A DNA stretch of 64,000 bases from Haliotis rubra (taxonomy: Eukaryota), in NCBI RefSeq assembly GCF_003918875.1, contig NW_025767358.1:558001-622000 (forward strand), written 5' to 3'. The position numbers and the translations under genes were made by a program. Positions 7,550-60,262 of the stretch are shown here, piece after piece. Under the pieces are notes generated by a model, which saw nothing but the letters and a program-made list of their open reading frames with translations, was not told the DNA's origin and ran no database searches. Every line of letters starts with the position of its first letter. Position 1 is the first letter of the stretch.

Positions 7550-10500
7550 ATGTGGCTACGGGTTCTGTGTTCCTTGTTTCTCTGCGGAGCGGCGTTCTCC
7601 GACACAACCGTCACCATCTACAACGAGTGGCTCTCCCAGGGTGGACGTATGCATTTTGAAGTTGGAAGATGGAACAAAATTAATGGTCTCACCCAACAGA
7701 GCCTCATTCCAAAGATGAAAGCCGTCGGAGCGGCTGCCGGGCGTTGGGTGAATAGAGATCTGAGGGCCGATCTCTTTCCAAAGGTAAGTATAAAGAAACA
7801 TTCAGCTCCTATGTAGTCATATGATATTGTATTGTATGACTACTGAATCGGTCTATTGTAAAGAGAAGTATATTTGAAAGGGGCAGTGGCGTCGACTAAT
7901 GGTTACGGCGTTTGCTCGTCACGCTGAAGACCCGGGTTCGATTCCTTACAGGCAGCTTGGGTTATCCGGGGTAATAATGGCCTTGATTGTTAGCGCTATG
8001 AGCATACCTAGTTTGGCGCTATATAAATGGACACATTATTATTATTATTATTATTATGGGTACAATGTGCGAAGTCCATTTCAGTCCCGTCGTGTTATTG
8101 CTGGAATATTGCTAAATCACTCACTCACTCATATTTTAAAATGGGAATGAGTGACAGGGTGAGTGGGGCAGCTACAATTTCTTTGTATTGCTAGGGTGCA
8201 GATCGTTGATTATAGTTCAACTACTCAGGGACAGCATAATACTATTCACCGTATCCCTCTGCTACAAAGGTTTATTGGTTCTGGTCTGGTTAAGGTTAAG
8301 ACTTAGCAGCACCGTGGTATGAGAGTCAGAATCGACCTGAGTGGGGCCATAGCCACATCAGCTGGGATCTTTGACAGGCGGTACATTGTATAGAGGACCC
8401 GTAGGCCACGGCACTTCGCGAGACCTTACGTTGTTTAGTACTTCCGATGACAAACACCGTTTCAAACCTTTTCGAATGGGCTCATGGTTGTCAATGACAG
8501 TAAGGAACCGATAATCCTTTTATCCTAATATCTAATTTATGTCTAACAAACTATCATTAAAATATCGACACAGTTCACTATTTGAGGGAGGACTGCAGAG
8601 AAAGGGACAGCTTGGTGTGCGAGAAAGGATGGAGACGGCACAGCACAGGTTAATGAATCGGCACTTTGTCGGCACTTGTGCACGTGCTTCTCTAACACCT
8701 GGCTGTCCCTTTCTCTGCACTCCTCTCTCGTAACAAATAGTGAACTGTGTCAATATTTTAATGATAGTTTGTTAAACAACTTTTTTTAATTTTACGACAT
8801 AAATTCTGCAAACAAATCACAGAGTTGATCTGATATTTTGATTACGATCAGCGTTTCATTGAATATTATATGTTTATTAGTTTTTGAGTTAGATTGCAAT
8901 TCATCGGTCCACTTTTGAGCCAAACGCACTATTTTTATAAGCATGGTTGGACACTTGGGTCTGGTCTGGTAAAGCCATATTTGGCGGTCGCGCAATTTGG
9001 AGTCAGAGTTGGTTCTTGAATGTACGCTTGTCACCTGAAATTTCGTACCGGAAGTAAGCTCGGCCCCGTCTCGCATATCGCAAGTGAGCGGCGAGCCGGG
9101 AACCGGCTAAGTACCGGAAGTAGCGCCTCGCGAGACTTACAGGCCCTATTCGGGCAAACAATAACAGATCAGATTACCATATACAGTCGACCAACGTTGT
9201 GTCGAACTCTGATTACTCGGTTGTCTCGATATAACATCTCGGTCCCGATAAAATCCTTCATAATTTATCATTATTCAAGCTCTTTAACTCGATACGGATG
9301 TCTCCATATTTCGTATATCTCAGTATAATTTCATGGTTCCAACAAGCAAAATTACCCTTTTAACTCGATATTTGCAAAGAAACTCGATATTCACCTTCCT
9401 TTTATGGGCAAATATCCCTCTGAACTGAAGTTGTTTCCGCACGTTTACACACGATGCAGCGCGAATCAAAGAGATGCAGTAGTGTAAACTAATTAGGGCT
9501 CTAATGAAGGTGTCCCTTGTTTGTTATCTAATTAGGATTAATTAAGAAGGAATTAATTAGGGTGAGTGAATGAGTTATCCATACAAATTGTCATCATTCT
9601 TAATTGGTTGGTTTGTTCTTTTACGCCACACTCAGCAATATTCCAGCTACATAGCGGCGGTCTGTAAATAATCTAGTCTGGACCAGACCATCCAGTGATC
9701 AACAGCATGAGCATCGATCTACTCAACTGGAAACCGAGCCTGACCACCCAATCCCGTTAGTGTCCTCTTACGACAAGCATTGGTTACTGAATATCAATAT
9801 TCTAACCCCGACTTTCACGGGTAACAGCCACTGTAAACAGTTCTGATTTGAAGAGGCCATTCAACCATGACTTGAGTAAATACTGGATTGTGTTTGGTTA
9901 ATTAAATTATGCGATCATTCATTGGTCATTGAGGATCCTCAATTCTGTATCTCCCGTGGTGAAAGAATCACTCTAAAAAATGTCCTGCTTGAATGTGTTG
10001 ATTTTTCAATGACAAGGGATAACTATTTCAAAGCGCCGTCTACGAAGGATCTCTTTTAAAAATATTCATTTAATTCTTGATTTTTTAAAAGAATTTCAAT
10101 TGGTTAATAATGTGGTAGTATATTGTTAGATGTATGTATGTTAATGTATAACTGGTATTGTATAACTGAAGTTGTTAGTGAGTGAATCCTGACACAGGGT
10201 CAAAGTATTTGTGAAATCATTGTCTTCCTGAGAGAGGCGTAAGTCCTAAAACATAAGAAATTCTATCATATTAAGTCTACCAGCTATTTAATCGTGCGAT
10301 TTTGGGGGTTTTAAGCGATGGCTAAATTTGAGCACAGGGATGGTGTGAATCCACCTAGGGTGTAAGTTACAGACCAGCTAGTTTCACTTCCATCTGTAAT
10401 AATGGGTTCTTTTCCTGTCCTTCACTGACATTTTTTTTTATAATGCAACTTTATAAATCACGAATGTATAAATTCTTGCTAATCACGATATGGCTGGAAT

Positions 10501-13053
10501 ACTGCAGATGTGACTATATACTATTTAACTCTCTCTCACCCACTCTTCATATGGGGGCTATTGTGTAGCTTAGTGGTTAAAGTGTTCGATCGTCACGTCC
10601 AAGACCCGGGTTCGAATCCCCACATGGGTACCATGTCTGAAGGTCATTTCTGGTGTCTCCGCTGTGAGACTGCTGGAATATTGCTAAAAGTGGTATAAAA
10701 CTAAAACTAACTCTTCATATGACAAATTCCTCTTGTATTATTGTCGTCCTCTTTTCAGTGGCCCCAAAGCTCTAGTCACCACGGGTTTCCAGACCCCAGC
10801 TATCTCCAAGACCATACCATGCAGGCCAAGACATTCGCAAATTATATGATCCAACTGAAGAACTATGGGAATTACATTGACGACATGGTCTGGAACATAG
10901 AAGGTGAGTGAGTGAGTTAATATTTAACGTCATATCGGCAATATCTCAGCCATATTGTGATGAAAACAGGCGATGGACAGTAAAAATAGTAGAGTATCAC
11001 AGATATGAATATACAACTAAACATTTTAATTAAAAAAACACAATGCAATAAAAAACACAGGATACAGATCGCCAACAACGGAAGGTAGATCACCATACTT
11101 GGGGCGATGGGGACTTAAAGTACCGTTTCTGGAACATAGAAGGTTTGAGATGACATTTAAATCATTTCGAGACGTTTATGGGAAAACTGCAATCTGTAGA
11201 GCAGATATATGGAACATGTTTTGAGTTAAGATCATAAGGCTTCAATTATTGCACCGGGGGTTGATTTTGGGAATCTCATTTCGCGCCCCAATCTCTTTCG
11301 GCAATGAACGTATATTTGACGTCTAGTTGCATGTATTTACATCTTCACCAATCCACTCTCTCTCTTTCACACATCAAGTAGTTTATAATGCGATGAGCTT
11401 AATTTAAAATTCTCTGACAGGGAAGGTTGCCCAGTGGTTACAGCTTTGGCTTGTCACGTCGCAGAACCGTGTTCGATTCCCCTCGTGGGTACAATGTGTG
11501 AATCGCACTTCTGGTTATTGCTGGGATATTGCTAAAAGTGGCGTAAAACTAAACTCACTCACTAAGCTGACTGGGACGGTTGTTTCTTTGCAGGTCTTCA
11601 CTGGCCAAGCTGGATTGATAAATCTCAGCATCTTGATAAATTCCCCAACAACCTTGACGCTGCATCAGAGTTTGTGTCCCTAATGATTCAGAGTGCCAAG
11701 GACTACACAGGAGGACACCTTCCCTCTATCTTTGAACCTCTCAATGAACCTGATTGGGTCGAAAAGTACATCCCCCCAGAAACGTGTACCGATTTCCACA
11801 AGGCCGTCGCCGACAAAGTGAGAAAGAAGTTTGGAATCAAAGTTAGCGGACCATCGTACACTAGTATGGCCTTACGACAAGCAGATGAAAATGATTTTGC
11901 CTTCTGGAAGAGAACTGCAAAGTTTCTTGACATGTCTCTTGATCACTTGGACTTTTTCTCTTTCCATTCCTACAACTACCTGACGGACGTATCAGGTAAA
12001 AGCTACTTGGGCATCAACGAAGCTCGTCTTTTTGCTTCTCTTGACATGGTGGAGAATTATGCTCATATCAAGAAAGGAAAAAGTGTTCAGTTAGTTAACA
12101 CTGAATTTGGATTAGGCTTAGATAACCTTCAAGGCGTTGGCCCAGATTTTGAAAATGGAATGACGGATTTTCAGACAATTTATCAAGCAAACGGTTTCTT
12201 GTGTTCTTTCTTTAACCTGAGAGAGGTGATGGACAGAGCTACAATCTTCCTCCTCTCTAATGAACAATACCCAGGTCATACTTCCCTTCGCAATTCCTTA
12301 TTTACGATGGATGGCCATGCCCTTAATGTGACAAAATACTTCACTTTTTGGAAAAACCTTGTTTATGATCACAGGTTTCTCCGATTCTCAAGTGAACTCA
12401 ATGGGAAGGAGAGAACAGTTTCACCGCTTGCCCTTGCAAACCCCCACACCAAAGAGCTGGTAGTACTTCTCCACAACTTTGGCAATAAATTTGAGAATGT
12501 AAAACTGGACTTCCCCAATAACTGGCTCGACCCTTCTACAGGCGAAGAAACATGTGTTGTATTAAAAGATGGTTATCCAGCTATTAATGCTGATTTCAAG
12601 TTTGACAGGCATAAACTGCATGGCACTGTTGGTCTCCCTGCAACATCAACCTGCTTCTACAAGTTTAAAACCAACTACAACTTCAACGGAATACGCACAG
12701 ACAATCAGCGCACATACTACGGCAGGAACATGCAAATCAAAATCATTAATGGACGTGCACAGACAACCGTCACTCTACCGAGCACTGGTTATCATGAGGG
12801 TCATCTTAGAGTGGGCATCAGCCGAGGGAAGAATTTCAATACCAAACCGAAATCCGTTGTGTTCAATGGTCAGACTTTGTCTTCAAGTTACATGCTGTAT
12901 GATGCAATGGGCACGCAAGGGAAAACAAACTGGAACGTGTGGGAATTCGCGGTCCCTCCGTCAAAAATCACCAAATCCAATTCCGTCACCTTATCCTTTG
13001 ATGGAAACGATGGATACGTGACCTCCGTTGGGCTCGCTGTTGGAAAAATTTAG
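7550..13053 (+). CDS. Secreted GH86-like beta-porphyranase/agarase, copy 1 (3 exons, 612 aa)
   Basis: Exons 7550-7783, 10759-10903, 11594-13053 with GT-AG introns (phases 0 and 1) splice into an open 1839-nt frame. Signal peptide MWLRVLCSLFLCGAAFS. Motifs FEPLNEP (E178, 11746-48), LDFFSFHSY, VNTEFG (E297, 12103-05) and C-terminal LRVGISR...NSVTLSFDGNDGYVTSVGL match my recollection of bacterial GH86 porphyranases. Confidence 0.88.
7880..8131 (+). mobile_element. tRNA-SINE family C interrupted by an (ATT)n-tailed L2-like 3' fragment (~7949-8056)
   Basis: SINE head to 7948 and tail from 8056 flank a segment ending GCGCTATATAAAT...(ATT)n. Confidence 0.65.
8540..8931. mobile_element. Foldback element remnant: ~85-bp inverted arms (8544-8776) plus a terminus of the 25394 MITE family
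   Basis: TAACAAACTATCATTAAAATAT.GACACAGTTCACTATTTG recurs in inverted orientation at ~8734-8775. Confidence 0.65.
9606..9823 (-). mobile_element. Retroposon family A copy (intron 1 of copy 1)
   Basis: Aligns to 1-245 with an internal deletion. Confidence 0.8.
9930..10545 (+). mobile_element. Nimb-LINE 3' fragment (ORF2 C-terminus + 3' UTR)
   Basis: Translates EDPQFCIS..ERITLKNVLLECVDFSMTRDNYFK, homologous to ORF 26151..26351. Confidence 0.7.
10553..10712 (+). mobile_element. tRNA-SINE family C
   Basis: TAGCTTAGTGG A box and GGTTCGAATCC B box. Confidence 0.75.
10906..11127 (-). mobile_element. Nimb-LINE 3' UTR fragment inserted at the exon 2 splice donor of copy 1
   Basis: 17-bp TSD TCTGGAACATAGAAGGT at 10889-10905 and 11128-11144. 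Confidence 0.85.
11420..11563 (+). mobile_element. tRNA-SINE family C, diverged (intron 2 of copy 1)
   Basis: B box GTTCGATTCC, shared body and tail. Confidence 0.7.
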
Positions 13054-20924: not shown

Positions 20925-23900
20925 ATGTTTCTACAAGTTCTGAACACTTTGTTGCTGTTGGAATCGGCGTTTTCTGACACAACTGTCACAATCTACAACG
21001 AGTGGCTCTCCCAGGGTGGACGGGTCAATTATGAAGTTGAACGATGGAACAACGTAAATGGGCTCACCCAACTGAGCCTAATTCCAAGTATGAAATCTAT
21101 CGGAGCGGTTCCTGGGCGTTGGGTAAACAGAGACCTCAGAGATAATCTCTTTGTAAATGTACGTATGAAGTAAAAACATCTTTCATACAAAAATATAGTT
21201 CGTGATTGATGTGATTCATGATTCATGTCCTTGTTTGCCTATTGAATCGGTATATTGTAAGGAGCAGTCTTTTTACGCAGCTTAAATGGGTTCGGAGTGA
21301 CAGTGTGTGTTCTATACTGGACAAAATAAGTTAGGGATATTGGTATTTTTATGATTGATATTTTATCAGTGTGTCAATGAATAAATAGATCATTATTAAT
21401 AATTTCAAAATTTACATATATCCCTAACTATTTTTGTCCAGTATATTTTCGCAAGGTGCAGATAGTTGCTCATAGTTCAGTTATGTATTTACTGGTTCAG
21501 ATTGAATTATTCAAAGTGACCCATTGGTGCAGGTGTTTGATAGTTCTGGTCCAAGCAGAATTTAGGGTACTGCTTAGTAAAGATGACCGTGAAGATCCGG
21601 GTTAGAATATTGGCCTTCAGTAACCCTTCTTGTCGTAAGAGGTGACTAACGGGATCGGGTGGTCAGACTCACTGACTTGGTTGACAGATGTCATCGTATC
21701 CCAATTGCGTAGATCGATGCTCATGATTTTGATCACTGGATTGTCTGGTCCATACTTGATTATTTACAGACCGCCGCCATATAGCTGGAATATTGCTGAG
21801 TATAACAAACCAACCAACCAACCAACCAATCCCTCTTCGATACTCATTCGCTATCATGGTCTCCCCACACAATCGCAGACCTCCTAAAATCACTTTTCTT
21901 AGGTCTTTGGCGGAGTTCAATGTTAGAAAAGCAGAAACGACTGCAAATGGGACAAACTAACCAATTCTGTCGTAAGTTCCAACAACTTCTTCGTTTGAAC
22001 TGGTCCTGCTTCCATGATCAGTTGTGTCAGTAGAAATTTCATTTGTAAGGAGGTAAGGAAAATATCTGAATGTAAGATTTCCAATTGAGAAATAATTGTA
22101 TTTACTAAAAAATCAGAAATGTAACACATCTCTAAAATGTCAATGGGAAATAGAAAATAAACTGACTCTGTTGCATATTTTCTGTTGCTCTGGTGTAACT
22201 GACCCCAAGAATATATGACACTATTTATGGATTGCATCTTATCTTTTATTCAATCTGGTGAAAGAGCAAGAATAATCTCTGAAACGTCGTGAGACAGAAG
22301 TTCTTATTCATAAAACGTGTCATTTATCCATGTTCATCCAACTTCTACACGCCTTGGAAGAACTTAGCTGACTCCAAGTATAAAACTGATCAAAGCGACC
22401 CATGGCACAACATAAAGGAATACACCATTATACTGTTTTTCCTTGAACACCCATTTACAATTGTATCATTAAAATGTTCATTTCTTTTACTTTTGTGAAA
22501 AATATTGTCCTTCAGTGGCTAAAAATGCAATTTAGATGAATGCCATAACAAACGTAACTGTTTATCTTTTAATTATTCACAGAGAAAACTGTTGGTTTAA
22601 TCTTATATTGTTTTATTCAGTGGCCTCAAAGCCCTAGTCACCATGGCTATCCGGACCCCACCTATCTACAGAACCAACCACTGCAGAGACGGACATTTTT
22701 GACGTATCTCAAACAATTGCAAGACTATGGGAATTACATCGCCAATATGGCCTGGGAAATGAAAGGTTTGTTCTTTTAATCCTCTCAAAGAGTGACTGAG
22801 TGAAATAAACTTTAACGTCACCACTGTTTCAGCCATACAGTGACGATAAACGTTTTGCATTCATAATAAATGCAAGTTGTTAAAAATCCAGTCATCAAAG
22901 GATTGACAATGAGTTGAGTTTTACATATGGTGTTTAAACCTGGCATGTAAATCTGAAACCTTTGAAGACAATATAAAAACAGGCTATAGGTCGTCAACAA
23001 GTGGAAGATCACGACACTAGGGACCATGGGGACTTACAGCGCGTTTTCCTATCTGCATGGACCATAGTTGAATTTGCATCATCCCTTCAAATATGACTAA
23101 TTTAGCCCCAAAATAAAACGAATACATATTCTATGAATACAAGTGTGTAGAAGTACATGGGAAAAGTATGCCATTAACTAATACATATAACTACTAACAG
23201 AACAGACGTGAAACAAATTTTGCGGTGTTTCAAGCTGAACTGAGAGCACTCTTTTCTCATTGGTAGGTAGTCCAATTTCCTTCTTACCTCTCTGAAAGCA
23301 GGTTACTCATAATCATTTATAACAACAGTTGAAAATGGCAGTAACTTAACCTGTCTACACAAACTTATTAACGCTTAAAGTGGGTGAACACCCAATGAAT
23401 ATTTCTTTCGTAATATTTCTCTTACCGTATATGCTGGTTGTTTACAGGTCTCTCCTGGCCCAGCTGGATAGATAAGTCTCAGCATCAAGACAAATTCCCA
23501 AACGATGTTGACGCTGCATCCGAGTTTGTCTCACTGATGGTTCAGAGCTGCAAGAACTACACATCAGGACGTCTTCCTTACATATTTGAAGTCATCAATG
23601 AACCTGATTGGGATGAAAAGTATATTGATCCACAAACCAATATAGATTACCACAGGGCCGTCGCCGACAAACTGAAATCAAGATTTGGAATGAAAGTGGC
23701 TGGACCATCATTCACTAGTATGGCCTTACGACTAGCAGATGAAAATAACTTCATCTTCTGGAAGAAAATTGCTAACTTTATGGACATGTCTCTTGATCAC
23801 TTGGACTTTTTCTCTTTCCATTCCTACAATCATATTTTCAATGCATCAAGCGAATCCTACTATGGTATCAACGAAGACCGTTTGTTTGCCTCTCTTGACA

Positions 23901-24913
23901 TGGTTGAGAATTATTCTCATCTCAAGAAAGGAAAAAGTGTTCAATTAGTAAACACTGAATTTGGAGTAGGTTTACTTACCATGGGCATTGCGCCCGATTT
24001 TGAAAATGGACTGATAGACTTTGAGACAATTTATCAAGCAAACGGTTTCATGTTTTCTTTCCTTAACCTCAGGGAGTTTATGGACAGAGCTACAGTGTAT
24101 CTCCTCGCAAATGAACAATACCCTGGCCATACTGCCCTTCGGAATTCCTTATTCACAAAAGATGGTCATCCACTTAATGCGACCAAATTCTTTCTATTTT
24201 GGAAAAACTTTATTGATGATCAAAAGTTTCTCCGAGTCTCTAGTCAATACGATGGAGAGGAGAAAATAGTCTCACCACTTGCACTAGCAAATCCTCACAC
24301 CAATGAGATGGTAGTTCTTCTCCACAACTTTGGCAGTGAATTTGAGAATGTAAAACTGGACTTCCAAAACAACTGGATCAATCCTTCTTCGGGTGAAGCG
24401 ACATGTATTCTGTTCGAAAAGGGTAAGCCAGCTGTTCATGCAGATTACCATTTCAACATATCCGGGGTTAATGGCACCGTCGGTCTTAATGGATCATCAA
24501 CATGCTTCTACAAGTTTCAAACCAACTACATCTTTAACAGATTACACACAGATAATCAGAACACATACTATGGCAGGGACATGCTCATTCCCATCAGCAA
24601 TGAACGTGCACAGACAACCATCAGTGTACCGAGCTCTGGCTACCATGAGGCCAATCTTAGAGTAGGAATTAGTCGTGGCATGAGAGACAATACAAAACCT
24701 AAGGCAGTTGTATTCAATGGTCAGACGTTGTCGTCAAGCTATATGTTGTTTGATTCTATGAAGACAACAAAAATGAGGACAACAACATGGAACGTGTGGG
24801 AGTTCATGGTACCAGCATCGCTGGTGAAAACAACCAACACCGTCAGCATGACCTTTGATGGGGACGGTGGCAACGTGACTTCCGTTGCTCTTGTTGCAGG
24901 AAAACTTGAGTAA
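20925..24913 (+). CDS. Secreted GH86-like beta-porphyranase/agarase, copy 2 (3 exons, 614 aa)
   Basis: Exons 20925-21158, 22621-22765, 23448-24913, same exon 1/2 sizes and intron phases as copy 1, open frame. Signal peptide, FEVINEP and VNTEFG present. An in-frame ATG at 20904 is an alternative start. Confidence 0.88.
21315..21443. mobile_element. Tc1/mariner-type MITE
   Basis: TIR TACTGGACAAAA..AGTTAGGGATAT, TA flanks. Confidence 0.75.
21586..21830 (+). mobile_element. Retroposon family A copy ((AACC)n tail)
   Basis: Reverse complement of 1-245. Confidence 0.8.
22792..23135 (-). mobile_element. Nimb-LINE 3' UTR fragment (intron 2 of copy 2)
   Basis: Shared motifs GAAGATCAC...CTAGGGACCATGGGGACTTACAG. 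Confidence 0.65.
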
Positions 24914-29519: not shown

Positions 29520-32500
29520 ATGTTTCTACCGGTTCTGTGCACCTTGTTGTTGTGGGGATCGGCATTCTCTGACACAACAGTCACAATCTACAACGAGTGG
29601 CTTGCCCAGAGTGGACGTGTCGATTATGAAGTTGAACGATGGAACAACGTCAATGGACTCATAGAATCCTACCTTGCTCAAAAGATGAAATCTATCGGAG
29701 CGGTTCCAGGGCGGTGGGTAAACACTGATCGGAGAAATGGTCTCTTTGCAAATGTAGGTATTAAATATAACCGTCTTCAAAGCAAAACAGATTTTGGAAG
29801 TGATATGGTTTTGTGCATGCTATGTATACCTACCAAATCAGAATATTGTAAGGAGCAGTATTTTTACCTCAAAATCGGAATGAGACAGTTGGAGTGTATA
29901 AGCTTAAGTATCTAGGGTGTTTTTGTCACGGTGTAGTTCATTGCTTATGGTTCGTTCTAGTCTATGCCAGTTTTTGATATTACAGAAACAGTCCAGTGTT
30001 GAAGTTCAGCTTTAAATAAATAGCTATATGATAACCTGTTTGTAATCTAGTTTAATAATACCTTTTCAAAACTTTTGTTTGTTCAAACAATACCGTCTGG
30101 GGAACCTTAATGTTCTTTTAATCCTGACTTTGAAGCCTTGCACATCTGATCAAAAAGTTTAAAGCAATAGTAAGTTTGTTTGTGCTATGTGATTAGTCTG
30201 CCCATCTCTTCAATTATCATTCAATATCATCACCATGTTGACGGCGGCTCGTGGTTAGGTGAGGTGAAATGGGGTTTAAGATAGTACTTAAGAATATTTC
30301 GCTCATATGACGTGCATGCATGTATTTATGTGGCTGCTTGTACTAGCCCAGACTTAAGCTGGTTTTATAAAACTAGCCCACTGAGATAAGCGTGCATACC
30401 TAACTCAGACACATTATACTGACTCCGAGCTGACCAGTCCTTGTTGTACCCAGTAATGCCGAGCGCCAGAAAGGGACCAATAAGTACCATATTTTAACGT
30501 CTTTTGGCATGACGCGACCGGGGATCGAACCGGCGACCTTCCACTCTCCGGGCGGATGCTCTAACCACTACATCATGGAGGTAGTCACACAGTCGTGGTC
30601 CTCTGGTCATGTCTTTTCTTAGGCCTTCTGTGGAACACAATCTCAGGTAATCAGATAGTCTGTGGTGGAGTTGTTTGAGATAACAATTTCTGTCTAACTG
30701 TCAACAACGTCATTAATTACAAAACCTAGCCTGAACAGGTATGGCCGCCAGCTCAGATGTGTCAGTACACATGAAGTCATCGTAGAGCAGTTAACCACAG
30801 TATCTGAATATGCGCTTTTCAATGGAGAAATACTTGTCGTTTAAGGTGTACAACAGAAGAATACTTGAAGTCAGACTTGACATAATAATACCCCACGAAT
30901 TGTCATGTTGAGACCTGTATTGTGGTGAAATTACACTGTGATACATTAATATTTCGCAGAATTACGGCGTGTTGAACATGCATGATTTATGCAAAAATAG
31001 TCCTAAGTCAGATATAGGTTGTTCTGCCTCTGGACGGGCCTGACTTAGGTCTTTTTGCCTCAAAACCCTTCGTAAGGAGGTGAAATTAGGTCTGGAGAGC
31101 ACATGTCACGCTGGAAGGAAGCTCTGAGAAAACTGAAACAATGGTTTGATTAAAACTAGTAAGCATTGACCAGTTCTTTCAAATATAAGTGTCACATCAT
31201 ACTATAATAGTGATTTTGTGTGAAAATGACAATATATGTACATAAACACACTCAAATGTGGTTTCAGGCACAAATTCATTTGTAACATACATAAAATATG
31301 TATAAAAAAACACATTCAGTCAGTAGTAAAATTATCTTATAAACGTATTTTATAGTAACATTTAATCGTAGTCATCACACAAAGGACGCACATAGTGTTA
31401 ATTAATATATATGCAGAATAGGGTTCACAGAGAACATTACGTTTTGGGCTAAATAATGGAATCTGTATCTCCCATTTTCCTGATCCAATTTACCCCGATG
31501 AGCTCGTTTCTCATTCATCTCATGATACTGATTACTGTAATGACAGTAAAGCTACTCTTCAATTTAATGTAGACTGTAATGTAGTTTGCTTCAGTTTGAC
31601 TGTGTTGAATTTGGAGACTGACAGACATTCAGTTCCAGTGTGTTCCAGTTCTACCCTCAGTAAAGTCAGATGGACATGTTCTGCAATGTTAACGTCACTG
31701 TCCCGAACAAAGCAGAAATGATGGTAAAGAGGTAAGTCTTGAGACCACGTCTAAAAGACTCAGAGTGTCGGCCATGTTCTGTACACGCCAGAGTACAACA
31801 AGGAGACTTACAATAGTAAAATATTTCCGGATGTTGCTGGTGTTCCTCAACTGTAGAGAACACGTCTTGGTTATTCGACTGATCTGACTATCCATTGAGA
31901 GGTCCGCGTCTTTGACACTCTCTGGCACTGGTACCTCCAGTTACCAAGGTAGTGAGCCCGGACTTCAGACTGATTAGGCTTGAAGAGTGAGTGTCATCTG
32001 CATATATGTGCTTGTTGATCTCATGTACCTGAATGATTGAGCTAAGTGCCTTGGTGTACAGCGTGAATAGAACTGGACCCAAAACCAACCCCTGTGGCAC
32101 ACCACGTGATAGATTCAAGGGAGCTGAATAGACACCATCGATATATACCTATTGTTACCAATTCCGCAGATATTTTTCGAACAAGGACTGGTAGGAATCA
32201 TATAGAAAGAACCATAAAACACTGGTCGAGATATTCCTCTAACAAGGATGTTTACTTCCTGGTTCTGAAATAACAGAATGATACAATGTAGCAACTTGTA
32301 TTTAGCACTTATTACCATGAAACAACATTTATGAATATCCCATTATAATGAAACTACAGCAATAAGTTCACAATACATGACACTGTCATGAAATGACTGC
32401 TCCCAAGTTTCACGAAACTTTGAAACAGTCTAGCAAAACTACAGATAGTAAATTCCATGAATTACCACTGAGCATGTTGACTTAATATTGATTCTAAAAC

Positions 32501-35500
32501 TACAAACTGACTCTATAATCCTGACATCTTAACAGAAATCTGCCATATAGTTACAAAACACAATGTATCAGAGCGCACCATTACCACGAAAATAGGATAC
32601 AGTTTTGCACGTGACCAAATAATTGAACATTCCTTGAATTGCAAAAATACTCTGAAAATAGTATAATACACCGCCACAAACATGGGTATATTATAAGAGT
32701 GACATTTGTACCTGAAGAGTGCATCTCGACCATCTCTGAAACTTCAACATTCAATATATACTTGCTCTAAACAAACTCCTTTTTGACCATCGCGGGTCAC
32801 TCATGCGCTCGCTCGCAGTAAACTTTTTACAGCCAGGGAGCATCTATTGTATCAAATGTCAACGACTTAAGCCACTACTACCATGTATCTACAGTCAGAG
32901 AACTTAACTACTGGTCAAATAAAGATATTATTCCAAACTAGTACACAAAATGCAAAATACTGCTGCACATTTCCTGACTAGAAACAATTCTGCAAAATAT
33001 TAGGATTACATCAGGGAAAACCAAACAAATTGTAGTCATGACCACACTAAATATACACTATTAGTCTCAAAAACCAAAACAGTTACAACATAATAAGACT
33101 GTCTGCATGGTATTCCATAATACCAATCTACATGATAAAAATGACAAGCTCTTTATACTGACACACAAACAAAACTAACCATAGCAGAATAATTCAGGTG
33201 CAATCTAGCCTTTAGTCAACATGTAATATTATTCCAAACAAGGACCATACACTACCATTGAGAAAGACGTCATCCTTGAGGCACCTGAGTGGCATCTGTT
33301 GGTCTATGGTATCAAAGGCCGCCCAAAAATCTAACAGTACCAGGAGGCCAACATTACCACTGTCAATACCACATCTAAGGTCGTTGAGGACTTTCAATAG
33401 GGCTGTCTCCGTACTGTGTTTAGGACGGTATGCCGATTGGAAAGGCTCGTACAAGGATCAGACGAGAGGATAACAGACGTATTGCTTGCTGACAAGAACA
33501 GTAGAGAAGACAGGGGCTATTCTTGAAATGCTTTGATTGAACAAAAATGTTGCAGATATTGTAATCCATAGGAATGAATTGTATATTACAGTGTGATGTT
33601 CAGAATGTTTTATGTTTGAATAAATCTATCACTCATTATGATGGCTGATGGGTGCACTGCAGTCTCTAAACCGATGGAAAAGCGTTACTAGTATCCTCTA
33701 AGGTTTAGATGATTTTCAGAACAAAATACATCGTTTTAAAACGCAATATTCCTCTCAAAGGTTCAGCATGTGCAATGGGTACATGCATCTTGTTTTGTAT
33801 CTTTCTCTTAATTTCTCGAAATGATTTTATGCATAATGACTTAGGTTGTTTTGCGTCTCAATTTTAGTGACTTAGGTCATTCTGCCAGAAAACGGAAATT
33901 CAAGAATCAGTTTTGCCTTCATAATTCTGAATATTTATGAAACAAAATTAAAGTAAAGCACAATACATTTATCCCATCATGCAAGTCTAACCAAGAAAAC
34001 AAACACGGTTTCCCAGTAGTTTTCAAGATACAGGTTTTTCGTCTCTCCTGATACCCTACAAAAGGGACTTAGGTCGTATTGCTCCTCATCCCTTTACTTT
34101 GTCAATGGGAAAGCTTAAAGAATGATTACCTGTGTCCTGCATATTTTGTGTTGCTGTGGTACAGCTGATCCCAAGTGAAAATCCATGGTGCATCATGATC
34201 AAAGAGAAATCAAGAAACCGCTTTTTCTATAGATTCTATTACAATACCATTTACATTTGAAATGCTTTTCTGAGCTTATTGTCATTTTAATTCATTTGAA
34301 GGGACGCTGTACCAAACGTACATGTAATTGTTTCACTTCTAACTCTAAATTTAGTACTATATTCATTCCTTTTATTCAGTGGACTGAAAACCCAAGTCAC
34401 CATGGTTATCCAGACACCACCTATCTCCAGGACCATACTTTCCAGCGAAGGACATTTCTAACATATGTGCAACAATTGCAATACTTTGGGCCTCACACCA
34501 CCAACATGGTCTGGGGAATGAAAGGTTTCTCAAGTCATTAAATCCTTTTAAAGACGTTTATGAAAAAAGCTTTTTTACATTTTTTTTTGAAAGATAACTA
34601 TAGGGAGAACACGGGACAAACCCATTTCACTGTGCTTAAACTTGAACTTACAGGTTTCACCTTACATTAGTCGAGTCACATGTTGATCTTCACGTCCCTG
34701 GAAGCAGATTACCACTTAACCTATGCACACGCATTAACGTTTAAAGTAGTTGAACACCCAATGAATATGCTCTACTTATGTTTTTACTTACAACATATGT
34801 TGCTTCCTTATAGGTCTCGCCTGGCCCGGCTGGATATATAAGTCTCAGCATAAAGATGTATTCCCAAACAACGTCAACGCTGCATCAGAGATGGTGTCGC
34901 TGATGGTCCAGAGCTGCAAGGACTACACAGGAGGACGCCTTCCTTACATATTTGAAGTCATCAATGAACCTGACGTGGACGAACAGTATATTGACCCACA
35001 ACTCAATATAGATTACCACAGGGCCGTCGCCGACAAACTGAAATCAAGATTTGGAATGAAAGTTGCCGGACCATCATACACCAGTATGGCATTACGACAA
35101 GCAGATTTAAATAACTTTAGCTACTGGAAGAGAACTGCTAAGTTTATGGACATGTCTCTTGATCACTTGGACTTTTTCTCTTTCCATTCCTACAACCATA
35201 TGAATGATGCAGCAGGTCACTCCTACTCTGGCATTAACGAAGATCGTTTATTTGCTTCTCTTGACATGGTGGAGAATTATTCTCATATCAAGATAGGAAA
35301 AGGTGTTCAGTTAGTTAACACTGAGTATGGACTAGGTTTAAATAACCTAGGCCTTGGGGCCAATTTTGAGAATGCCATGTCAGACTTTCAGACAATATAT
35401 CAAGCAAACGGTTTCATGTTTTCTTTCCTTAACCTGAGAGAGTTTATGGACAGAGCTACCGTGTTTCTTCTTTCAAATGAACTATACCCAGGTCATACTT

Positions 35501-36279
35501 CCCTTCGGAATTCCCTATTTACCACTGATGGTCATCCCCTTGAGCCAACCAAATTCTTCCTGTTTTGGAAAAACTTTATCAATATTCAAAAGTTTCTCCG
35601 GGTATCTAGTCAACACAATGGACAGGAGAGAACAGTTTCACCACTTGCCCTTGCAAACCCCCACACCAAAGAGATGGTAGTTCTCCTCCACAATTTTGGC
35701 AATAAATCAGAGAATGTAAAACTGGACTTCCCCAACAACTGGATCAATCCTTCTTCAGGTGAGCAGACATGTATCCTGTTCGAAAAGGGTAAGACAGCCG
35801 TTCATAGCGATAGCCATTTTGACAGGTCTAAGCTTCATGGCAGTGTCGCACTTCCTGCAACATCAACCTGCTTCTACAAGTTTAAAACCAACTACATCTT
35901 TAGCAAAATACACTCAGATAATCAGAATACATACTATGGCAAGAACATGCTCATCCCCATCAGCAACGGACGTGCACAGACAACTATCGGTGTACCGAGC
36001 TCTGGCTACCATGAGGCTCATCTTAGAGTGGGAATTAGTCGAGGCAGGACTCATACTACAAAACCTAAGACAGTTGTGTTTAATGGTCACACTTTGTCTT
36101 CTAGCTACATGTTATTTGATGCTATGAAAACTCAAAGCAAAAGGAAAACAAACTGGAACGTATGGGAGTTCGTGGTCCCTGAATCACTGGTGAAAACAAC
36201 CAACACCGTCAGCATGACATTTGATGGGGACGGTGGCAGCGTGACATCCGTTGCTCTCGTTGCAGGAAAACTTCAGTGA
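29520..36279 (+). CDS. Secreted GH86-like beta-porphyranase/agarase, copy 3 (3 exons, 614 aa)
   Basis: Exons 29520-29753, 34380-34524, 34814-36279, GT-AG introns, open frame. Signal peptide MFLPVLCTLLLWGSAFS, FEVINEP and VNTEYG present. Confidence 0.88.
30256..30586 (-). mobile_element. Second V-SINE-like copy (intron 1 of copy 3)
   Basis: Aligns end to end with 14833-15180. Confidence 0.7.
31690..32115 (-). mobile_element. L2/CR1-group LINE RT fragment
   Basis: GVPQGLVLGPVLFTLY and YADDT motifs. Confidence 0.75.
33245..33455 (-). mobile_element. L2/CR1-group LINE RT fragment (upstream part of the same RT)
   Basis: QSAYRPKHSTETALLKVLNDL...LVLLDFWAAFDTID. Confidence 0.75.
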
Positions 36280-45025: not shown

Positions 45026-48000
45026 ATGTTTCCTCAGGTTCTTTTGACTCTGGGTTTGTGGGGGTCAGCGTTTTCTGACACAACCGTCACAATCTACAAC
45101 GAGTGGCTTTCCCAGGGTGGACGTGTCAATTATGAAGTTGAACGATGGAACAACGTTAATGCACTCACCCAAATGAACCTGATTCCAAAGATGAAATCTA
45201 TCGGAGCGGTTTCTGGGCGTTGAGTAAACAGAGACCTGAGAAAAGGTCTCTTTGCAAATGTACGTATGTAAACACCATCTTCAATGCTAAACGATTATGA
45301 ACGTGATATGATTCATGCATGATTTGTGTGTCCAGTGAATCTGTATATTGTCAGGAGCAGTATTTGTACATATGTTTAATGGAAATGAGACAATTAGAAT
45401 GTATGACGGTATAAGACTATATGTTTTCATGGTGCAGATCATTGCTCACAATACATACTAGACAATGCAACTTATGTTTTGTTAAATTATAAAATGTCCG
45501 AACGAGTCATGCCGCCATGACCATCAGCTCAAAAGTATAGATCAATTCATTTGGAAGCAGGTTAGGACAATATCTGAACATGAGATTTTCAATTGAAAAT
45601 AACTGGCTCTTTTTTTTAGAACATTAACGTTAGAAATAATATCATGACAATATACACTCAGTGCCATTATTGAAGGGTCATGTGTCTTTTTTTTGCATTG
45701 CTACGAATCAATTTCATATTATGAAATATAAGTAATGAGAAGTCAATACTGTTTAAAACCCTGTTGACAGAAGGCACCATAGAACACATTAGACTACGCA
45801 CATGTCTCATTATTGAGAAGTTTAAGCTATAGAGTGTTTCAAAAACATGATCATTTTGATAAATTCCGAAAATACTGTCAATGTCTGTATCGTGGAAACG
45901 CAGCATTTTGCCCTGTATTCCACGAGAAAGTGCGACTTCCCATGCACAGATTTAGGCTATAAATGTCAACTGTAGTCTCACCCTGACATCATGGTTTCTG
46001 ATACGAAATGAGACGTTTCCTGACGGTAGCAGAGAGAGGTCAAGCAAGCTGGTCACAGTCAACGACAAGCTGCAAATCACTTCAATGTGAGTCAAAGTGT
46101 CATTTGGTTGCAAAGGTTTCAAGCCACGGGATCGATGGAATATGCGAGAAGACCAGGCCGACCTAGAGTTACCAGTGCAAGGCAAGACAGATATATGGGA
46201 AACGTCGCTTTACGTTACCGATTCGTGACCTCCAGTGACCTTCAGACAGAACATTATAATGTTCATGGTGTCAGGATAAGCAGGAACACCATTCGACGCC
46301 GATTACGTGCCCACTCAGTGGGCTCCGTTCAAGGCGACCAGCAGTCCGTCCACCACTTCTGCAACGTCACAGACATGCATGTTTAGCCTGGATCAGTCAC
46401 GGTCGTTGGAATCATCGTCAATGGTCGAACGTGATCTTTACAGATGAACGCCGGTTTAATTTGTCTATTAATGATGGTCATTGGAGAATATTCTGCAGAA
46501 GAAGTGAACGGTTCACTGATGCTACAGTTGTCACACACAATAGGTTTGGTGGCGGGTCAGTCATGGGTTGGGCCGGTATCATGGCTACAGGAAGAAAGAT
46601 CCCAGCTTAATATTATTGATGGAAATTTGACTGGTCAGTGNNNNNNNNNNNNNNNNNNNNNNNNNNNNNNNNNNNNNNNNNNNNNNNNNNNNNNNNNNNN
46701 NNNNNNNNNNNNNNNNNNNNNNNNNNNNNNNNNNNNNNNNNNNNNNNNNNNNNNNNNNNNNNNNNNNNNNNNNNNNNNNNNNNNNNNNNNNNNNNNNNNN
46801 NNNNNNNNNNNNNNNNNNNNNNNNNNNNTTTTTGCAAGCTACGCATGGATTTTATGGTCGTGACCCTCTTCTACAGGACGATAATGCCAGACCTCACAGA
46901 CACAACTGCAGTCACTGATTATCTTCAGCAACAGGGTGTGGAACGGGTGGACTGGCCGGCATGTTCACCAGACCTTAATCCAATCGAGCATGCATGGGAT
47001 GAACTTGGCAGACGTGTTTACAGACGTCACCCTGCTCCACAAGAGTGTCTTCGGAGAGTTCATGTGCAAGAATGGGAGGCTATTCTTTATGAACTTGATG
47101 AGAAGCATGAGGTATCGGTGTAACTCTGTCCAGGACCAGAGAGGCGGCCACATGGTCATGGACTCTATTGTTGCGACTTTCAGTGTTGTGGGTATCCCTT
47201 TATTAGATGTGCGTGAAGATGCAGTCCTGATCCTTTCCTCACAGCACAGCACCGAACACTCTCCAGACTGTCTTTTCTTTCTATAATCTTGTCACAGCAT
47301 ACTCCACTTTGCATTATATTACCTTATTGCTACATAACCCTTCAATAATGGCACTGAGTATATAAAAAAGTAACATATTATTAATGAGGAAAAGAAGGAA
47401 TACATGTTAGGTACGTATCTGCTATTGCTGTGGTACAGCTCACCTCAAAGTATGATCAAAGCCACAAACTGTGCACTTTGAATGAGTCTGGCAGAAAACC
47501 ACTTTTTTCATTCGATCAGTAAACAGTAATATATTTTCCTTTGCTGTATGTTTTTGCCATTCAAAGGCTGCATATTTATTTAAAAGGACGCCGTAACAAA
47601 TGTACCTGTTTATCTTTTAATTCTTCACATGGAACTATGCGATATTATTTTTTCATTCAGTGGACCGAAAACCCTCATCACCATGGTTATCCGGACCCCA
47701 CCTATCTCCAGGACCGTTCTCTCATGCGACAGACCTTTCTAACATATGTGCACCAATTAGAAAACTTTGGGCCTCACACCGCAAACATGGTCTGGGAAAT
47801 GAAAGGTTTCTCCAGTCATTTAATCATTTTCAAAAGTCAAACAGGTGTCAAACACTGTGTTTAAAGTTGAACTAACAGCAGCATCATTCATCGGTCGGTA
47901 TTAGGAGTCCAATGTTGATCCTCACGTCCCTGAAAGCATATTACACGTGATTTATCATGTAACCCACAGTCAACAACATAACCTACACACACTCATGTAC

Positions 48001-49549
48001 GTTTAAAGTAGTAACATTCGTTGAATTTGCTTAGCCTAACTTTTCACTTAATTTCACCTACAATAGATAATGCTTTTTTACAGGTCAGGCCTGGCCCGGC
48101 TGGATCGATAAGTCTCATCATCATGGCGGATTCCCAAACAATGTTGACGCTGCATCAGAGATGGTGTCACTGATGGTTCAGAGTTGCAAAGACTACACAG
48201 GAGGACGCCTTCCTTACATATTTGAAGTCATCAATGAACCTGACTGGTACGAAGATATTATTGATCCACAAACGAATATAAATTACCACAGGGCTGTCGC
48301 CGACAAACTGAAATCAAGATTTGGAATGAAAGTTGCCGGACCGTCGTACACCAGTATGGCATTACGACAAACAGATGAAAACAACTTCAGCTCTTGGAAG
48401 AGAACTGCCAACTTTATGGACATGTCTCTTGATCACTTGGACTTTTTCTCTTTCCATTCCTACAACCGTCTGAATGATGCATCGGGTCACACCTACTCTG
48501 GCATCAACGAAGCTCGTCTGTTTTCTTCTCTTGACATGGTGGAGAATTATTCTCATATCAAGAAAGGAAAAAGCGTTCAGTTAGTTAACACTGAATATGG
48601 ATTAGATTTACTTAACCTAGGCCTCAGTCCCAGTTTTGAGAATGCAATGACAGATTTTCAGACAATATATCAAGCAAATGGTTTCATGTTTTCTTTCCTT
48701 AACCTGAGAGAGTTCATGGACAGAGCTACAATATATCTCCTCGCAAACGAGCAATACGCAGGTCACACTTCCCTTCGGAATTCCTTATTTACTGATGATG
48801 GTCATCCCCTTGAGCCAACCAAATTCTTCCTGTTTTGGAAAAACTTCATAAATATTCAAAAGTTTCTACGGGTCTCTAGTCAACACGATGGACAGGAGAG
48901 AATAGTTTCACCACTTGCCCTTGCAAACCCCCACACCAAAGAATTGGTAGTTCTTCTCCACAACTTTGGCACAAAAGATGAGAATGTTAAACTGGATTTC
49001 CCCAACAACTGGATCAACCCTTCTTCAGGTGAACAGACATGTATTCTGTTCGAAAAGGGTAAGACAGCTGTTCATCCCAATAACCATTTTGACAGGTCTA
49101 AGCTTCATGGCAGTGTCAGTCTTCCTGCAACATCAACCTGCTTCTACAAGTTTCAAACGAACTTCAACTTTGCTGGACTACACACAGATAATCAAAACAC
49201 ATATTATGGCAAGGGCATGATAATCCCCATCAACAACGGACATGCTCAGACAACTATCGGTGTACCGAGCTCTGGCTACCACGAGGCCCATCTTAGAGTG
49301 GGAATCAGTCGCGGCAAGTATACTACTACAAAACCTAAGACAATTGTGTTCAATGGTCGCACTTTGTCTTCAAGCTACATGCTGTTTGATTCTATGAAGA
49401 CATCAAACAAGAGGACAACAACATGGAACGTGTGGGAGTTCATGGTACCAGCATCGCTGGTGAAAACAACTAACACCGTCAGCATGACCTTTGATGGGAA
49501 TGGTGGCAGCGTGACATCGGTTGCACTCGTTGCAGGAAAACTTCAGTGA
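45026..49549 (+). pseudogene. GH86-like porphyranase copy 4, premature stop W66* (null allele, young pseudogene or base error)
   Basis: Exons 45026-45259, 47661-47805, 48084-49549. TGA at 45221-45223 where the other four copies have TGG (GRWVN). Splice sites, catalytic motifs and the rest of the frame are intact. Confidence 0.78.
45655..47360 (+). mobile_element. Tc1-like DNA transposon (defective) in intron 1 of copy 4
   Basis: TIRs (C/T)ACTCAGTGCCATTATTGAAGGG at 45655-77 and 47338-60, TA on both flanks; FTDE, QDDNARPH and WPACSPDLNPIEHAWDELGRR motifs; spans an N-gap. Confidence 0.87.
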
Positions 49550-56459: not shown

Positions 56460-57298
56460 ATGTTGTTACTGCTTCTGTGCTCCGTGTTGTGTGGGGCAGC
56501 GTTGGCTGACACAACCGTCGCAATCTACAACGAGTGGCTCTCCCAGGGTGGACGTGTCAATTATGAAGTTGAACGATGGAACAACGTTAATGGACTCACC
56601 CAATACTACCTTGTTCCAAATATGAAATCTATCGGAGCTGTTCCTGGGCGTTGGGTGAACAGAGACCTCAGAAAAGATCTCTTTGCAAATGTACGTATGA
56701 AGTAAAGCCATCTTCAATGCAAAAAGGATTTTGGACTTGATGTGATATGATTCGTACATGATTTGTATGCCTAGCGAATCAGTATATTGTAAGGAGCATT
56801 ATTTCTGTCTTAAAATCAGAATGAGACAGATGGAATGTATGAGCTGTTGTATCTGTATTTTTCACGGTGCAGTTCAGTGCTCATAATCCAAACACGTCCA
56901 TGCCAGCGTTATTTTATATATGTTAAAATAGCCAAGTCTGTTGTAACTGCTAACAACGTAATTATTTGTGGAAACCTCCTCTGAACGAGTCTGGCCGCCA
57001 TGACTGTCAGCTCAGATGGGTCAATGCAGATGAATTCCTTGGAAAGGAGTTAAGGACAGTATCTGAATAAGTGCTGTTAAAAAAATAACCGTCTTTTTCT
57101 GAACATTTAAGATATATAACAAAGGAATAATTTGTCAATGGAAAAACGAAAATGATTACCTGTGTGCTGCCTATTTTGCGTTGGTGTGGTACAGCTGATC
57201 TCAAGTGCAAATCCGATCTAAGCCACATCACATCACATGGTCAAAGAGTGTGCCATGAAATCACTTTTTCTGTTGATTCGTGGGGCGGTGGGGTAGCC

Positions 57299-57717
57299 TG
57301 ATTCAGAGGTCACTGAAGAATATATTTTCTTCAACTTCCTAATAAATAGGAAACAATATACGAAATTTCAAGGACATACAAAGAAATCAAACACAATAGA
57401 ATAATTTGAATTTACTTTTAGATAATATTACGTTGTCATGTTTCATATATTGAAACATAATGTATAAACACAAATAATTATACATCCAAGCTCGAATAGA
57501 GTAGACATAATTTAACGTACTAACTTAAAGCTTACTGAATTGTAACTAGTTATTTTCCATAATCTAAAGTTGATAATGTTACCTAATCGAATATAAAGTG
57601 ATAAGTCGCCCCTTTGCATCGAATATATATACATGTCAATGTTATTACAATAATGGGGGCGGTGGGGTAGCCTAGTGGTTAAAGCGTTGGCTCGTCACGC
57701 CGAAGACCCGGGTTCGA
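57299..57717 (+). repeat. Identical copy of 40624-41042
   Basis: No mismatch seen over ~419 bp. Confidence 0.9.
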
Positions 57718-57820
57718 TTCCCCACATGGGTACAATGTGTGAAGCTCATTTCTGGTGTCCCCCGCCGTGATATTGCTGGAATATTGCTAAAAGCGTCGTA
57801 AAACCAAACTCACTCACTCG
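57656..57820 (+). mobile_element. tRNA-SINE family C, full length
   Basis: Near-identical to 40981-41146. Confidence 0.85.
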
Positions 57821-58314
57821 CTCTGTTGATTCGCTTACAATGTCAATGACATGTCGAAACTTTTCAGAGTTTATTGTCTTTCAACGGCAGCAAACTCATT
57901 TAAAGTGATGCTGTACAAGACGTAAGTGTTTATCCTCTAATTCTTCATAGAGACAACCCATCACTTTACTACCATATTGATATATTTTATTCAGTGGACT
58001 GAAAGCCCAAGTCACCATGGTTATCCGGATCCCACCTATCTCCAGGACCATTCTCTCCAGAGAAGGACATTTCTAACATACCTGCGACAATTGCAAAACT
58101 ACGGGCCTCACACCACAAACATGGTGTGGGAAATGAAAGGTTTGAAAAGTCACATAATCATTTTTTAAAGTTTATAAACATATTTTTTACGTTTTTGTTT
58201 CAGTCATAACTGAAGACAGGAAAGGTGTCAAACGTATTTCACTGTGTTTAAAGTTGAACTGAGAATATTCACATTTCACTGGTCGGTATTGGGAGTCCCA
58301 CTCTGGTCTTTAAG

Positions 58315-60256: not shown

Positions 60257-60262
60257 AATAAA
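60257..60262 (+). terminator. Polyadenylation signal overlapping stop, copy 5
   Basis: TGAATAAA. Confidence 0.6.

What the first reader, a model, noticed from the sequence alone, without database searches (positions are those of the whole stretch)
34960..35390. Paralog divergence concentrates in loops next to the catalytic residues
After NEPD the copies read WVEKY / WDEKY / VDEQY / WYEDI / WDEKY. After FHSYN they read YLTDVSGKSYL / HIFNASSESYY / HMNDAAGHSYS / RLNDASGHTYS / HMFNTSSKSYY. After TE they read FGLGLDN / FGVGLLT / YGLGLNN / YGLDLLN / FGVGLLS. Core strands are almost invariant. In (beta/alpha)8 GH-A enzymes these loops line the cleft. Copy 3 uniquely loses the Trp three residues after the acid/base, suggesting tuning to differently sulfated or methylated galactans.
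Basis: partly seen in the sequence, partly recalled or inferred. Interest (0 to 1): 0.7.

Follow-up and report, generated by a model that had tools for sequence, protein, structure and literature searches.

The report
Abalone GH86 seaweed-enzyme paralogs: variable loops
Five side-by-side abalone genes for a red-seaweed-digesting enzyme (family GH86) differ somewhat more in three loops beside the catalytic residues than elsewhere, but the pattern fits relaxed constraint in a large gene family, and adaptive tuning is not shown.

Summary
The window is from Haliotis rubra. It holds five tandem three-exon GH86 (beta-agarase/porphyranase-like) genes, from a family with at least 93 matches in this genome.

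**Observation.**
- All fifteen motif strings are correct.
- The NEP and TE glutamates align with the GH86 acid/base and nucleophile.
- In a confident model, the three segments are the beta4-alpha4, beta6-alpha6 and beta7-alpha7 loops on the catalytic face.

**"Concentrates" is overstated.**
- Among the four copies with an open last exon, 40% of sites vary: 44% in catalytic-face loops and 42% in the C-terminal beta domains.
- Only the loop after FHSYN is a clear hotspot.

**Selection.** My codon likelihood models used 24 intact paralogs.
- Catalytic-face loops as a class do not differ from the rest.
- The one candidate positively selected site lies elsewhere, in the beta8-alpha8 loop.

**Copy status.**
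- Copy 3's Trp-to-Val change is real and derived. Copy 3 still evolves under purifying selection.

Substrate tuning remains an untested hypothesis.

The parts
7550..13053 (+). Copy 1 (LOC124257191, protein P0017, 612 aa). Exons are 7550-7783, 10759-10903 and 11594-13053. The copy is intact.
   Evidence: tblastn of P0017 gives 100% on exon 3. This protein was used for the structure model.
20925..24913 (+). Copy 2. Exons are about 20925-21158, 22621-22765 and 23448-24913. All frames are open and GT/AG sites are present.
29520..36279 (+). Copy 3 (LOC124257188), the finding's gene. Exons are 29520-29753, 34380-34524 and 34814-36279. The copy is intact, and intron 1 is long (4.6 kb).
   Evidence: P0001 (isoform X2) matches 34813-36276 at 100%. 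The terminal-branch omega is 0.36, below 1 (p=4e-5).
34963..34989 (+). NEPD motif of copy 3 (acid/base Glu codon 34966-34968) and the five residues after it. The Val codon GTG at 34975-34977 stands where the other copies have TGG (Trp).
   Evidence: This is the beta4-alpha4 loop in the model. Its omega is 0.68 (n=7 codons).
35182..35229 (+). FHSYN motif (end of strand 6) and the 11-residue segment after it. This is the clearest variability hotspot of the three.
   Evidence: The best overlapping window ranks 14 of 486 by nonsynonymous rate.
35317..35346 (+). NTE motif (nucleophile Glu codon 35323-35325) and the seven residues after it. The family-wide hot part lies just downstream, at about 35344-35365.
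   Evidence: TE+7 has omega of about 0.11 on the grid. The whole beta7-alpha7 loop has 0.43.
35524..35526 (+). Codon equivalent to P0017 residue 365 (beta8-alpha8 loop). It is the only candidate positively selected site in the last exon.
   Evidence: M1a/M2a-like LRT 6.86, p=0.03, omega about 6.5, posterior 1.0. FEL-like p=0.06.
45026..49549 (+). Copy 4. Exons are 45026-45259, 47661-47805 and 48084-49549. Exon 1 has TGA at 45221-45223 in place of the invariant Trp66 codon.
   Evidence: The last exon is still under purifying selection (omega 0.26), so the stop is recent, polymorphic or an assembly error.
56460..60257 (+). Copy 5. Exons are 56460-56690, 57995-58139 and 58791-60257. The last exon is broken by three one-base indels near 58996, 59070 and 59156, between NEPD and FHSYN.
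   Evidence: It is 99% identical to the intact copy L004 on contig C2249. Non-coding flanks are also 97-99% identical.

Best explanation
The window carries part of a large, lineage-specific tandem expansion of GH86 genes in the abalone Haliotis rubra. GH86 enzymes are retaining endo-beta-galactanases of the agarase/porphyranase type. Each gene has three exons and encodes a signal peptide, a (beta/alpha)8 barrel with the NEP acid/base and TE nucleophile, and two C-terminal beta-sandwich domains.

The copies evolve by birth and death under overall purifying selection. The barrel strands and the loops after strands 1-3 are tightly conserved. The loops after strands 4, 6 and 7, next to the two catalytic glutamates, are the least constrained part of the catalytic face, so they accumulate replacements and small indels faster.

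The most economical reading is relaxed constraint in these loops. By general GH-A geometry they probably form the aglycone (+1/+2) side, but that placement is my inference. Some functional diversification may be included, but positive selection is not demonstrated. Copy 3's Trp-to-Val change at acid/base+3 is a real derived change in a gene that is still constrained.

- Shown: family, fold, catalytic residues, loop positions, rates, and broken copies.
- Inferred: secretion, digestive role, which subsites the loops form, and any specificity difference.
For: - **Family and fold.** Pfam BPA_C matches all five copies. The profile matches the GH86 structures 8h97, 5ta1 and 4aw7 at E 4e-37 to 1e-26. 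Foldseek gives TM of about 0.8 to the same structures.
- **Expansion.** There are at least 93 matches in this genome, and several have internal stops. Dozens of paralogs occur in four Haliotis species.
- **Selection.** Global omega is 0.276. Pairwise NG86 values are 0.26-0.35.
- **Loop variability.** Family entropy is highest in the loops after strands 4, 7 and 6.
- **Copy status.** The copy 3 branch has omega 0.36, below 1. Copy 4 has a stop and copy 5 has indels.
Against: - That is above the gene background (p=0.006-0.03). It could hide a mixture of positively selected and constrained sites that 21-26 codons cannot resolve.
- The Trp-to-Val change needs two nucleotide changes in one codon on a short branch.
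- In the three bacterial GH86 structures, the two agarases have Trp or Tyr at acid/base+3 and the porphyranase has Val.
- The genome keeps many intact, constrained paralogs. That is easier to explain if they are not fully redundant.
- I had no model coordinates, so distance to the cleft was judged from secondary-structure topology only.
Confidence: 0.65

Rival explanations
1. After duplication, selection reshaped the loops beside the catalytic residues. Different paralogs would then accept differently modified red-algal galactans: 3,6-anhydro, 6-sulfated or methylated units at +1/+2. Copy 3's Trp-to-Val would open room at the +1 subsite.
For: - The loops after strands 4, 6 and 7 are the most variable elements in 61 mollusc GH86 proteins.
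- Their omega is raised over the background.
- At acid/base+3, the bacterial agarases BuGH86 and Aga86A_Wa have W and Y, the porphyranase BpGH86A has V, and copy 3 has V.
- Copy 3 also has unique changes at other conserved catalytic-face positions: Q351L after strand 8, and R69T and L71R after strand 2.
- Copy 3 stays under purifying selection.
Against: - Omega is below 1 in these loops across 24 paralogs.
- No site there is significant.
- Among the window copies the signal is indistinguishable from neutrality.
- The C-terminal domains vary as much.
- The known agarose/porphyran determinants sit after strands 1 and 8 (PMC5849685).
- The W/Y-versus-V correlation rests on three enzymes.
- No biochemical study of an animal GH86 turned up in my paper searches.
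Confidence: 0.25
2. Copy 3 is drifting towards loss of function. On this view the Trp loss and the other unusual replacements are early decay in a redundant array that already holds two broken neighbours.
For: - Copy 4 (stop) and copy 5 (frameshifts) show ongoing gene death.
- Copy 3 has replacements at conserved positions: W181V, Q351L, R69T, L71R and P91T.
- The only protein model retrieved for it is an N-terminally short isoform (P0001).
- No RNA evidence could be obtained.
Against: - All three exons are open and have GT/AG sites.
- Both catalytic Glu are present.
- The terminal-branch omega of 0.36 does not differ from the background and is well below 1 (p=4e-5).
- Its count of unique changes at conserved sites (5) is typical of the family, where the range is 0-26.
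Confidence: 0.08

Closest known systems
BuGH86, beta-agarase of Bacteroides uniformis NP1 (PDB 5TA0/5TA1/5TA5)
   Same: - It has the same three-domain fold (Foldseek TM 0.79-0.81).
- The EVINEP acid/base motif is identical.
- The nucleophile Glu lies at the end of strand 7. This is the column of the E322Q mutant.
- It has an aromatic residue (Trp) at acid/base+3, as most copies here do.
   Different: - Sequence identity is only about 17%.
- It is a bacterial, intronless gene in a polysaccharide utilisation locus. Here the genes are animal, have three exons and sit in large tandem arrays.
- The loops after strands 4, 6 and 7 differ in length and sequence.
- The activity of the abalone proteins is untested.
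BpGH86A, beta-porphyranase of Bacteroides plebeius (PDB 4AW7)
   Same: - It belongs to the same family and shares the C-terminal BPA_C domain (Pfam PF18040).
- It reads NEPFV, with Val at acid/base+3 as in copy 3.
   Different: - Its sulfate pocket at -2 is based on a Ser after strand 8 and a Phe after strand 1 (PMC5849685).
- At the aligned position after strand 8, the abalone copies mostly have Leu. That is closer to the agarase state.
- The alignment in that stretch is uncertain by one residue.
Aga86A_Wa, GH86 agarase (PDB 8H97)
   Same: It gives the best profile match (E 4e-37) and TM 0.81. It has Tyr at acid/base+3.
   Different: It is bacterial and longer (742 aa). Identity is about 19%.
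Other lineage-specific digestive glycanase expansions in herbivorous molluscs (from my own knowledge, not tested here)
   Same: They are tandem duplicates of secreted polysaccharide-degrading enzymes in algal grazers, with birth-and-death turnover.
   Different: Those that have been characterised act on alginate, cellulose, laminarin or mannan. I found no paper on an endogenous animal GH86.

Membership tests
Glycoside hydrolase family 86 (CAZy GH86) | Significant sequence similarity to characterised GH86 enzymes over the catalytic domain | tested here: met
   phmmer of the copy 3 last exon against PDB gives 5ta1 at 2e-16 and 4aw7 at 1e-12. The profile of 61 mollusc sequences gives 8h97 at 4e-37, 5ta1 at 1e-36 and 4aw7 at 1e-26.
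Glycoside hydrolase family 86 (CAZy GH86) | (beta/alpha)8 barrel followed by two beta-sandwich (Ig-like) domains | tested here: met
   The AlphaFold2 model of P0017 has pLDDT 89.9. The top Foldseek hits are the three GH86 structures at TM 0.74-0.81. The next families (GH30, GH79, GH51) fall far behind. Pfam BPA_C matches the C terminus of all five copies.
Glycoside hydrolase family 86 (CAZy GH86) | Two catalytic glutamates: the acid/base in NEP and the nucleophile about 120 residues later | tested here: met
   E178 and E297 (P0017 numbering) are invariant in 61 sequences. They align with the bacterial catalytic residues, including the E322Q column. All five window copies have them.
Glycoside hydrolase family 86 (CAZy GH86) | Hydrolysis of beta-1,4 linkages in agarose, porphyran or funoran | not testable with these tools
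   This needs an enzyme assay. The names 'beta-porphyranase A-like', 'beta-agarase-like' and 'funoran endo-beta-hydrolase-like' are automatic.
Clan GH-A | Acid/base at the C-terminal end of strand 4 and nucleophile at the end of strand 7 of the barrel | tested here: met
   DSSP of the model places strand 172-178 ending at E178 and strand 292-299 containing E297. Two strands lie between them (209-211 and 247-256).
Positively selected (adaptively diversifying) loops | dN/dS above 1 at sites of the loops, or a significant site-model test that places sites there | tested here: not met
Loop omegas are 0.40-0.68. Window-copy pN/pS of 0.8-1.6 does not exceed neutral.

The most novel reading that the evidence does not exclude
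Abalone would encode its own battery of GH86 galactanases. Their aglycone-side loops, after strands 4, 6 and 7, would have diversified to handle different red-algal galactan decorations. Copy 3 would have converged, through Trp-to-Val at acid/base+3, on the state of the bacterial porphyranase. The animal, not only its gut bacteria, would then hold a substrate-partitioned toolkit for agarose, porphyran and funoran.
Probability: 0.2. Interest if true: 0.6.

Novelty: new member of a known kind. Interest (0 to 1): 0.3.

Why it matters
GH86 is known from bacteria that break down red seaweed. A large endogenous GH86 family in a red-algae grazer suggests that the animal itself digests agar-type galactans. 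My paper searches found no study of such a family. If paralogs differ in specificity, they would be a natural library of agarase/porphyranase variants, and a case of diet-driven gene family expansion. The present evidence shows only a modest relaxation of the loops beside the catalytic residues. The finding is therefore a reasonable hypothesis for enzymology rather than a demonstrated adaptation.

Tried and rejected
1. **Ancestral states.** I did not reconstruct ancestors by other means. Instead I used codon likelihoods that sum over internal states: a FEL/FUBAR-like grid, partition LRTs, branch tests and an M1a/M2a-like mixture.
2. **3D distances.** I used DSSP topology instead.
3. **RNA evidence.** The one run search found only DNA-like holders. 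The laid contigs cover introns and show no splice joints. Expression therefore stays unknown.
4. **Literature.** Five searches found no paper on an endogenous mollusc GH86. The BpGH86A paper was not held.
5. **Haplotig question.** I considered whether contig C2249 is a simple haplotig of this array. I rejected that for copies 1-3, whose best matches are at most 85% at the protein level. It stays open for copies 4 and 5, which are 94-98% identical in DNA, non-coding sequence included.
6. **Spliced copy 3.** Exons were handled one by one, and the structure model is that of copy 1 (database protein P0017).
7. **Printed residue number.** The Met printed as M396 in PMC5849685 does not fit the 5ta1 sequence at that number. 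By position it is the Met in the PFAMLKSEW stretch (native 369), which I take to be a printing transposition.

Full report
**What is there.** The window has few long ORFs. Five of them are about 460-aa paralogs on the + strand. Each is the last exon of a three-exon gene.
- Exon 1 encodes a signal peptide and barrel strands 1-2.
- Exon 2 is a 49-codon exon.
- Exon 3 is 1.46 kb and holds strands 4-8 of the barrel and both C-terminal domains.

The closest database proteins are Haliotis rubra gene models (copy 3 = P0001, copy 1 = P0017). Dozens of paralogs occur in H. rubra, H. rufescens, H. cracherodii and H. asinina. More distant ones occur in a chiton and a pearl oyster. A six-frame search of the window's own genome gives at least 93 matches, several with internal stops. 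I did not test its view on the family's origin.

**Family and catalytic residues.**
- Pfam finds the beta-porphyranase A C-terminal domain in all five copies.
- The last exon of copy 3 matches the GH86 structures 5ta1, 4aw7 and 8h97. A profile of 61 mollusc sequences matches them at E 4e-37 to 1e-26.
- The NEP Glu aligns with the bacterial EVINEP/EPLNEP motif.
- The TE Glu aligns with the column that differs between 5ta1 (E) and the E322Q mutant 5ta0 (Q).

An AlphaFold2 model of copy 1 (P0017 with a 61-sequence alignment) has mean pLDDT 89.9. Its best Foldseek hits are the three GH86 structures at TM 0.74-0.81. In that model E178 ends strand 172-178 and E297 lies in strand 292-299, which is the GH-A arrangement. 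These are the starts of the beta4-alpha4, beta6-alpha6 and beta7-alpha7 loops on the catalytic face.

**The observation.**
- All fifteen quoted strings are correct, and the copy 3 coordinates fit.
- Copy 5 was read across three frames. Compared with a 99%-identical intact copy on contig C2249, it has two one-base insertions and one one-base deletion between NEPD and FHSYN.
- Copy 4 has TGA where all 61 family members have Trp66.
- Only copies 1-3 are intact as assembled.

**Does divergence concentrate in these loops?**

*Among the four copies with an open last exon.* 200 of 494 aligned sites vary (40%).

| Region | Share of sites that vary |
|---|---|
| Barrel strands | 19% |
| Helices | 38% |
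| Catalytic-face loops | 44% |
| Bottom loops | 48% |
| C-terminal domains | 42% |

These columns were chosen after looking, however.
- Columns that follow any invariant run of 4 or more residues are already 48% variable on average. Against that control the FHSYN segment ranks 1 of 28. NEPD and TE rank 10 of 28.
- The six residues after each of strands 4-8 are 59% variable, against 39% elsewhere (p=0.04). The loops after strands 6 and 7 are hot; those after strands 5 and 8 are cold.

*Across 61 mollusc proteins.* The loops after strands 4, 7 and 6 have the highest mean entropy of all structural classes (1.88, 1.75 and 1.52 bits, against 1.31 overall). The loops after strands 1-3 are average or below and hold many invariant residues.

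They hold about a tenth of the differences, and the C-terminal domains vary as much.

**Selection.** I built a codon alignment of 24 intact H. rubra last exons and a maximum-likelihood tree. I then wrote a GY94-type likelihood that sums over internal states.
- Global omega is 0.276. Pairwise NG86 values among the window copies agree (0.26-0.35).
- The partition tests gave:

| Partition | Omega | Comparison |
|---|---|---|
| Catalytic-face loops | 0.29 | 0.27 for the rest, p=0.35 |
| beta4-alpha4 loop | 0.68 | 7 codons; not distinguishable from 1 |
| beta6-alpha6 loop | 0.40 | below 1 |
| beta7-alpha7 loop | 0.43 | below 1 |
| C-terminal domains | 0.31 | |
| Strands | 0.17 | |

- Site by site, 216 sites show purifying selection at p<0.1 and 12 lean positive.
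- An M1a/M2a-like mixture gives LRT 6.86 (p=0.03) for a single site. This is P0017 residue 365, copy 3 codon 35524-35526, in the beta8-alpha8 loop.
That is above the rest of the gene (p=0.006-0.09) but not above neutral (p=0.4-0.7).

**Copy 3.**
- Its codon at acid/base+3 is GTG where copies 1, 2 and 4 have TGG. That is two nucleotide changes.
- Trp is kept in 22 of 24 close paralogs. In the wider family the position is W in only 22 of 61 sequences. It is often A, V, G or P, with an aromatic two residues later. The loss is therefore derived within its clade but not exotic.
- Copy 3 has five unique changes at otherwise conserved last-exon sites, which is typical for the family. Two are on the catalytic face: W181V, and Q351L after strand 8.
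- It also has R69T, L71R and P91T in exons 1-2.
- Its terminal branch has omega 0.36. That does not differ from the background and is well below 1, so it is not decaying freely.

**Link to known specificity determinants.**
- In the bacterial enzymes, the -1 and -3 subsites are conserved. Agarose/porphyran choice is attributed to the -2 subsite: a Phe/Thr after strand 1 and a Ser/Met after strand 8 (PMC5849685).
- The abalone position that aligns with the Ser/Met is mostly Leu.
- On the other hand, the residue at acid/base+3 is W (BuGH86 agarase), Y (Aga86A_Wa agarase) and V (BpGH86A porphyranase). Copy 3 has V.
- In GH-A enzymes the stretch after the acid/base usually borders the +1 subsite. 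For these substrates that subsite holds the L-sugar, which carries the anhydro bridge or the 6-sulfate. This is my inference from general GH-A architecture and was not tested here. It is a lead from three enzymes, not evidence.

**Verdict.** The sequence facts are right, and the three loops are genuine local hotspots on the catalytic face of a bona fide GH86 fold. "Concentration" is overstated, no positive selection is detected there, and two of the five copies are broken as assembled. The best reading is ordinary paralog divergence with relaxed loops in a large birth-and-death family. Functional tuning stays possible and needs enzymology.

**Limits.**
- No model coordinates were available.
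- Gene conversion among tandem copies was not screened.
- The codon analysis covers the last exon only.
- No RNA data were available.
- The stretches of N at 17506-17641, 46641-46828 and 60436-60657 were left as they are.

Noticed in passing
window 45221-45223: Copy 4 has TGA in place of the Trp66 codon (TGG), which is invariant in 61 family members. The rest of the gene looks constrained, so the stop is a recent null allele, a polymorphism or an assembly error.
   Followed up: partly
window 58996, 59070, 59156: Copy 5 has three one-base indels within 160 bp, next to short T runs, relative to a 99%-identical intact copy (L004). It is either a pseudogene or a locally poor assembly near the contig end.
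   Followed up: partly
window 47358-51046 and 56996-61724 versus L003, L004, L005 (contig C2249): The regions of copies 4 and 5, introns and flanks included, are 94-98% identical to collinear loci on another contig. This points to a recent segmental duplication or an uncollapsed divergent haplotype.
   Followed up: partly
window 35524-35526 (P0017 residue 365): This hypervariable codon in the beta8-alpha8 loop has 10 different residues in 24 paralogs and no synonymous change inferred. It is the only candidate for diversifying selection.
   Followed up: yes
window 26528-27196 (-): A 222-aa ORF with a reverse transcriptase domain (PF00078, E 3e-9) lies between copies 2 and 3. It is a retroelement fragment inside the array.
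   Followed up: partly
window 2703-3881 (+): A 392-aa ORF upstream of the array has no Pfam match. Its nature is unknown.
   Followed up: partly
window 11594-13053 (copy 1): Copy 1 is the most divergent of the five. It has 26 unique changes at otherwise conserved sites, reads FEPLNEP instead of FEVINEP, and has a raised terminal-branch omega of 0.42 (p=0.011).
   Followed up: partly
window 29754-34379: Intron 1 of copy 3 is about 4.6 kb, against about 1.3-3.0 kb in the other copies. The cause was not examined.
   Followed up: no
window 10904-10909: The exon 2 donor of copy 1 is a consensus GTGAGT. Copies 2-5 use weaker GTT... donors at the same split Gly codon.
   Followed up: partly
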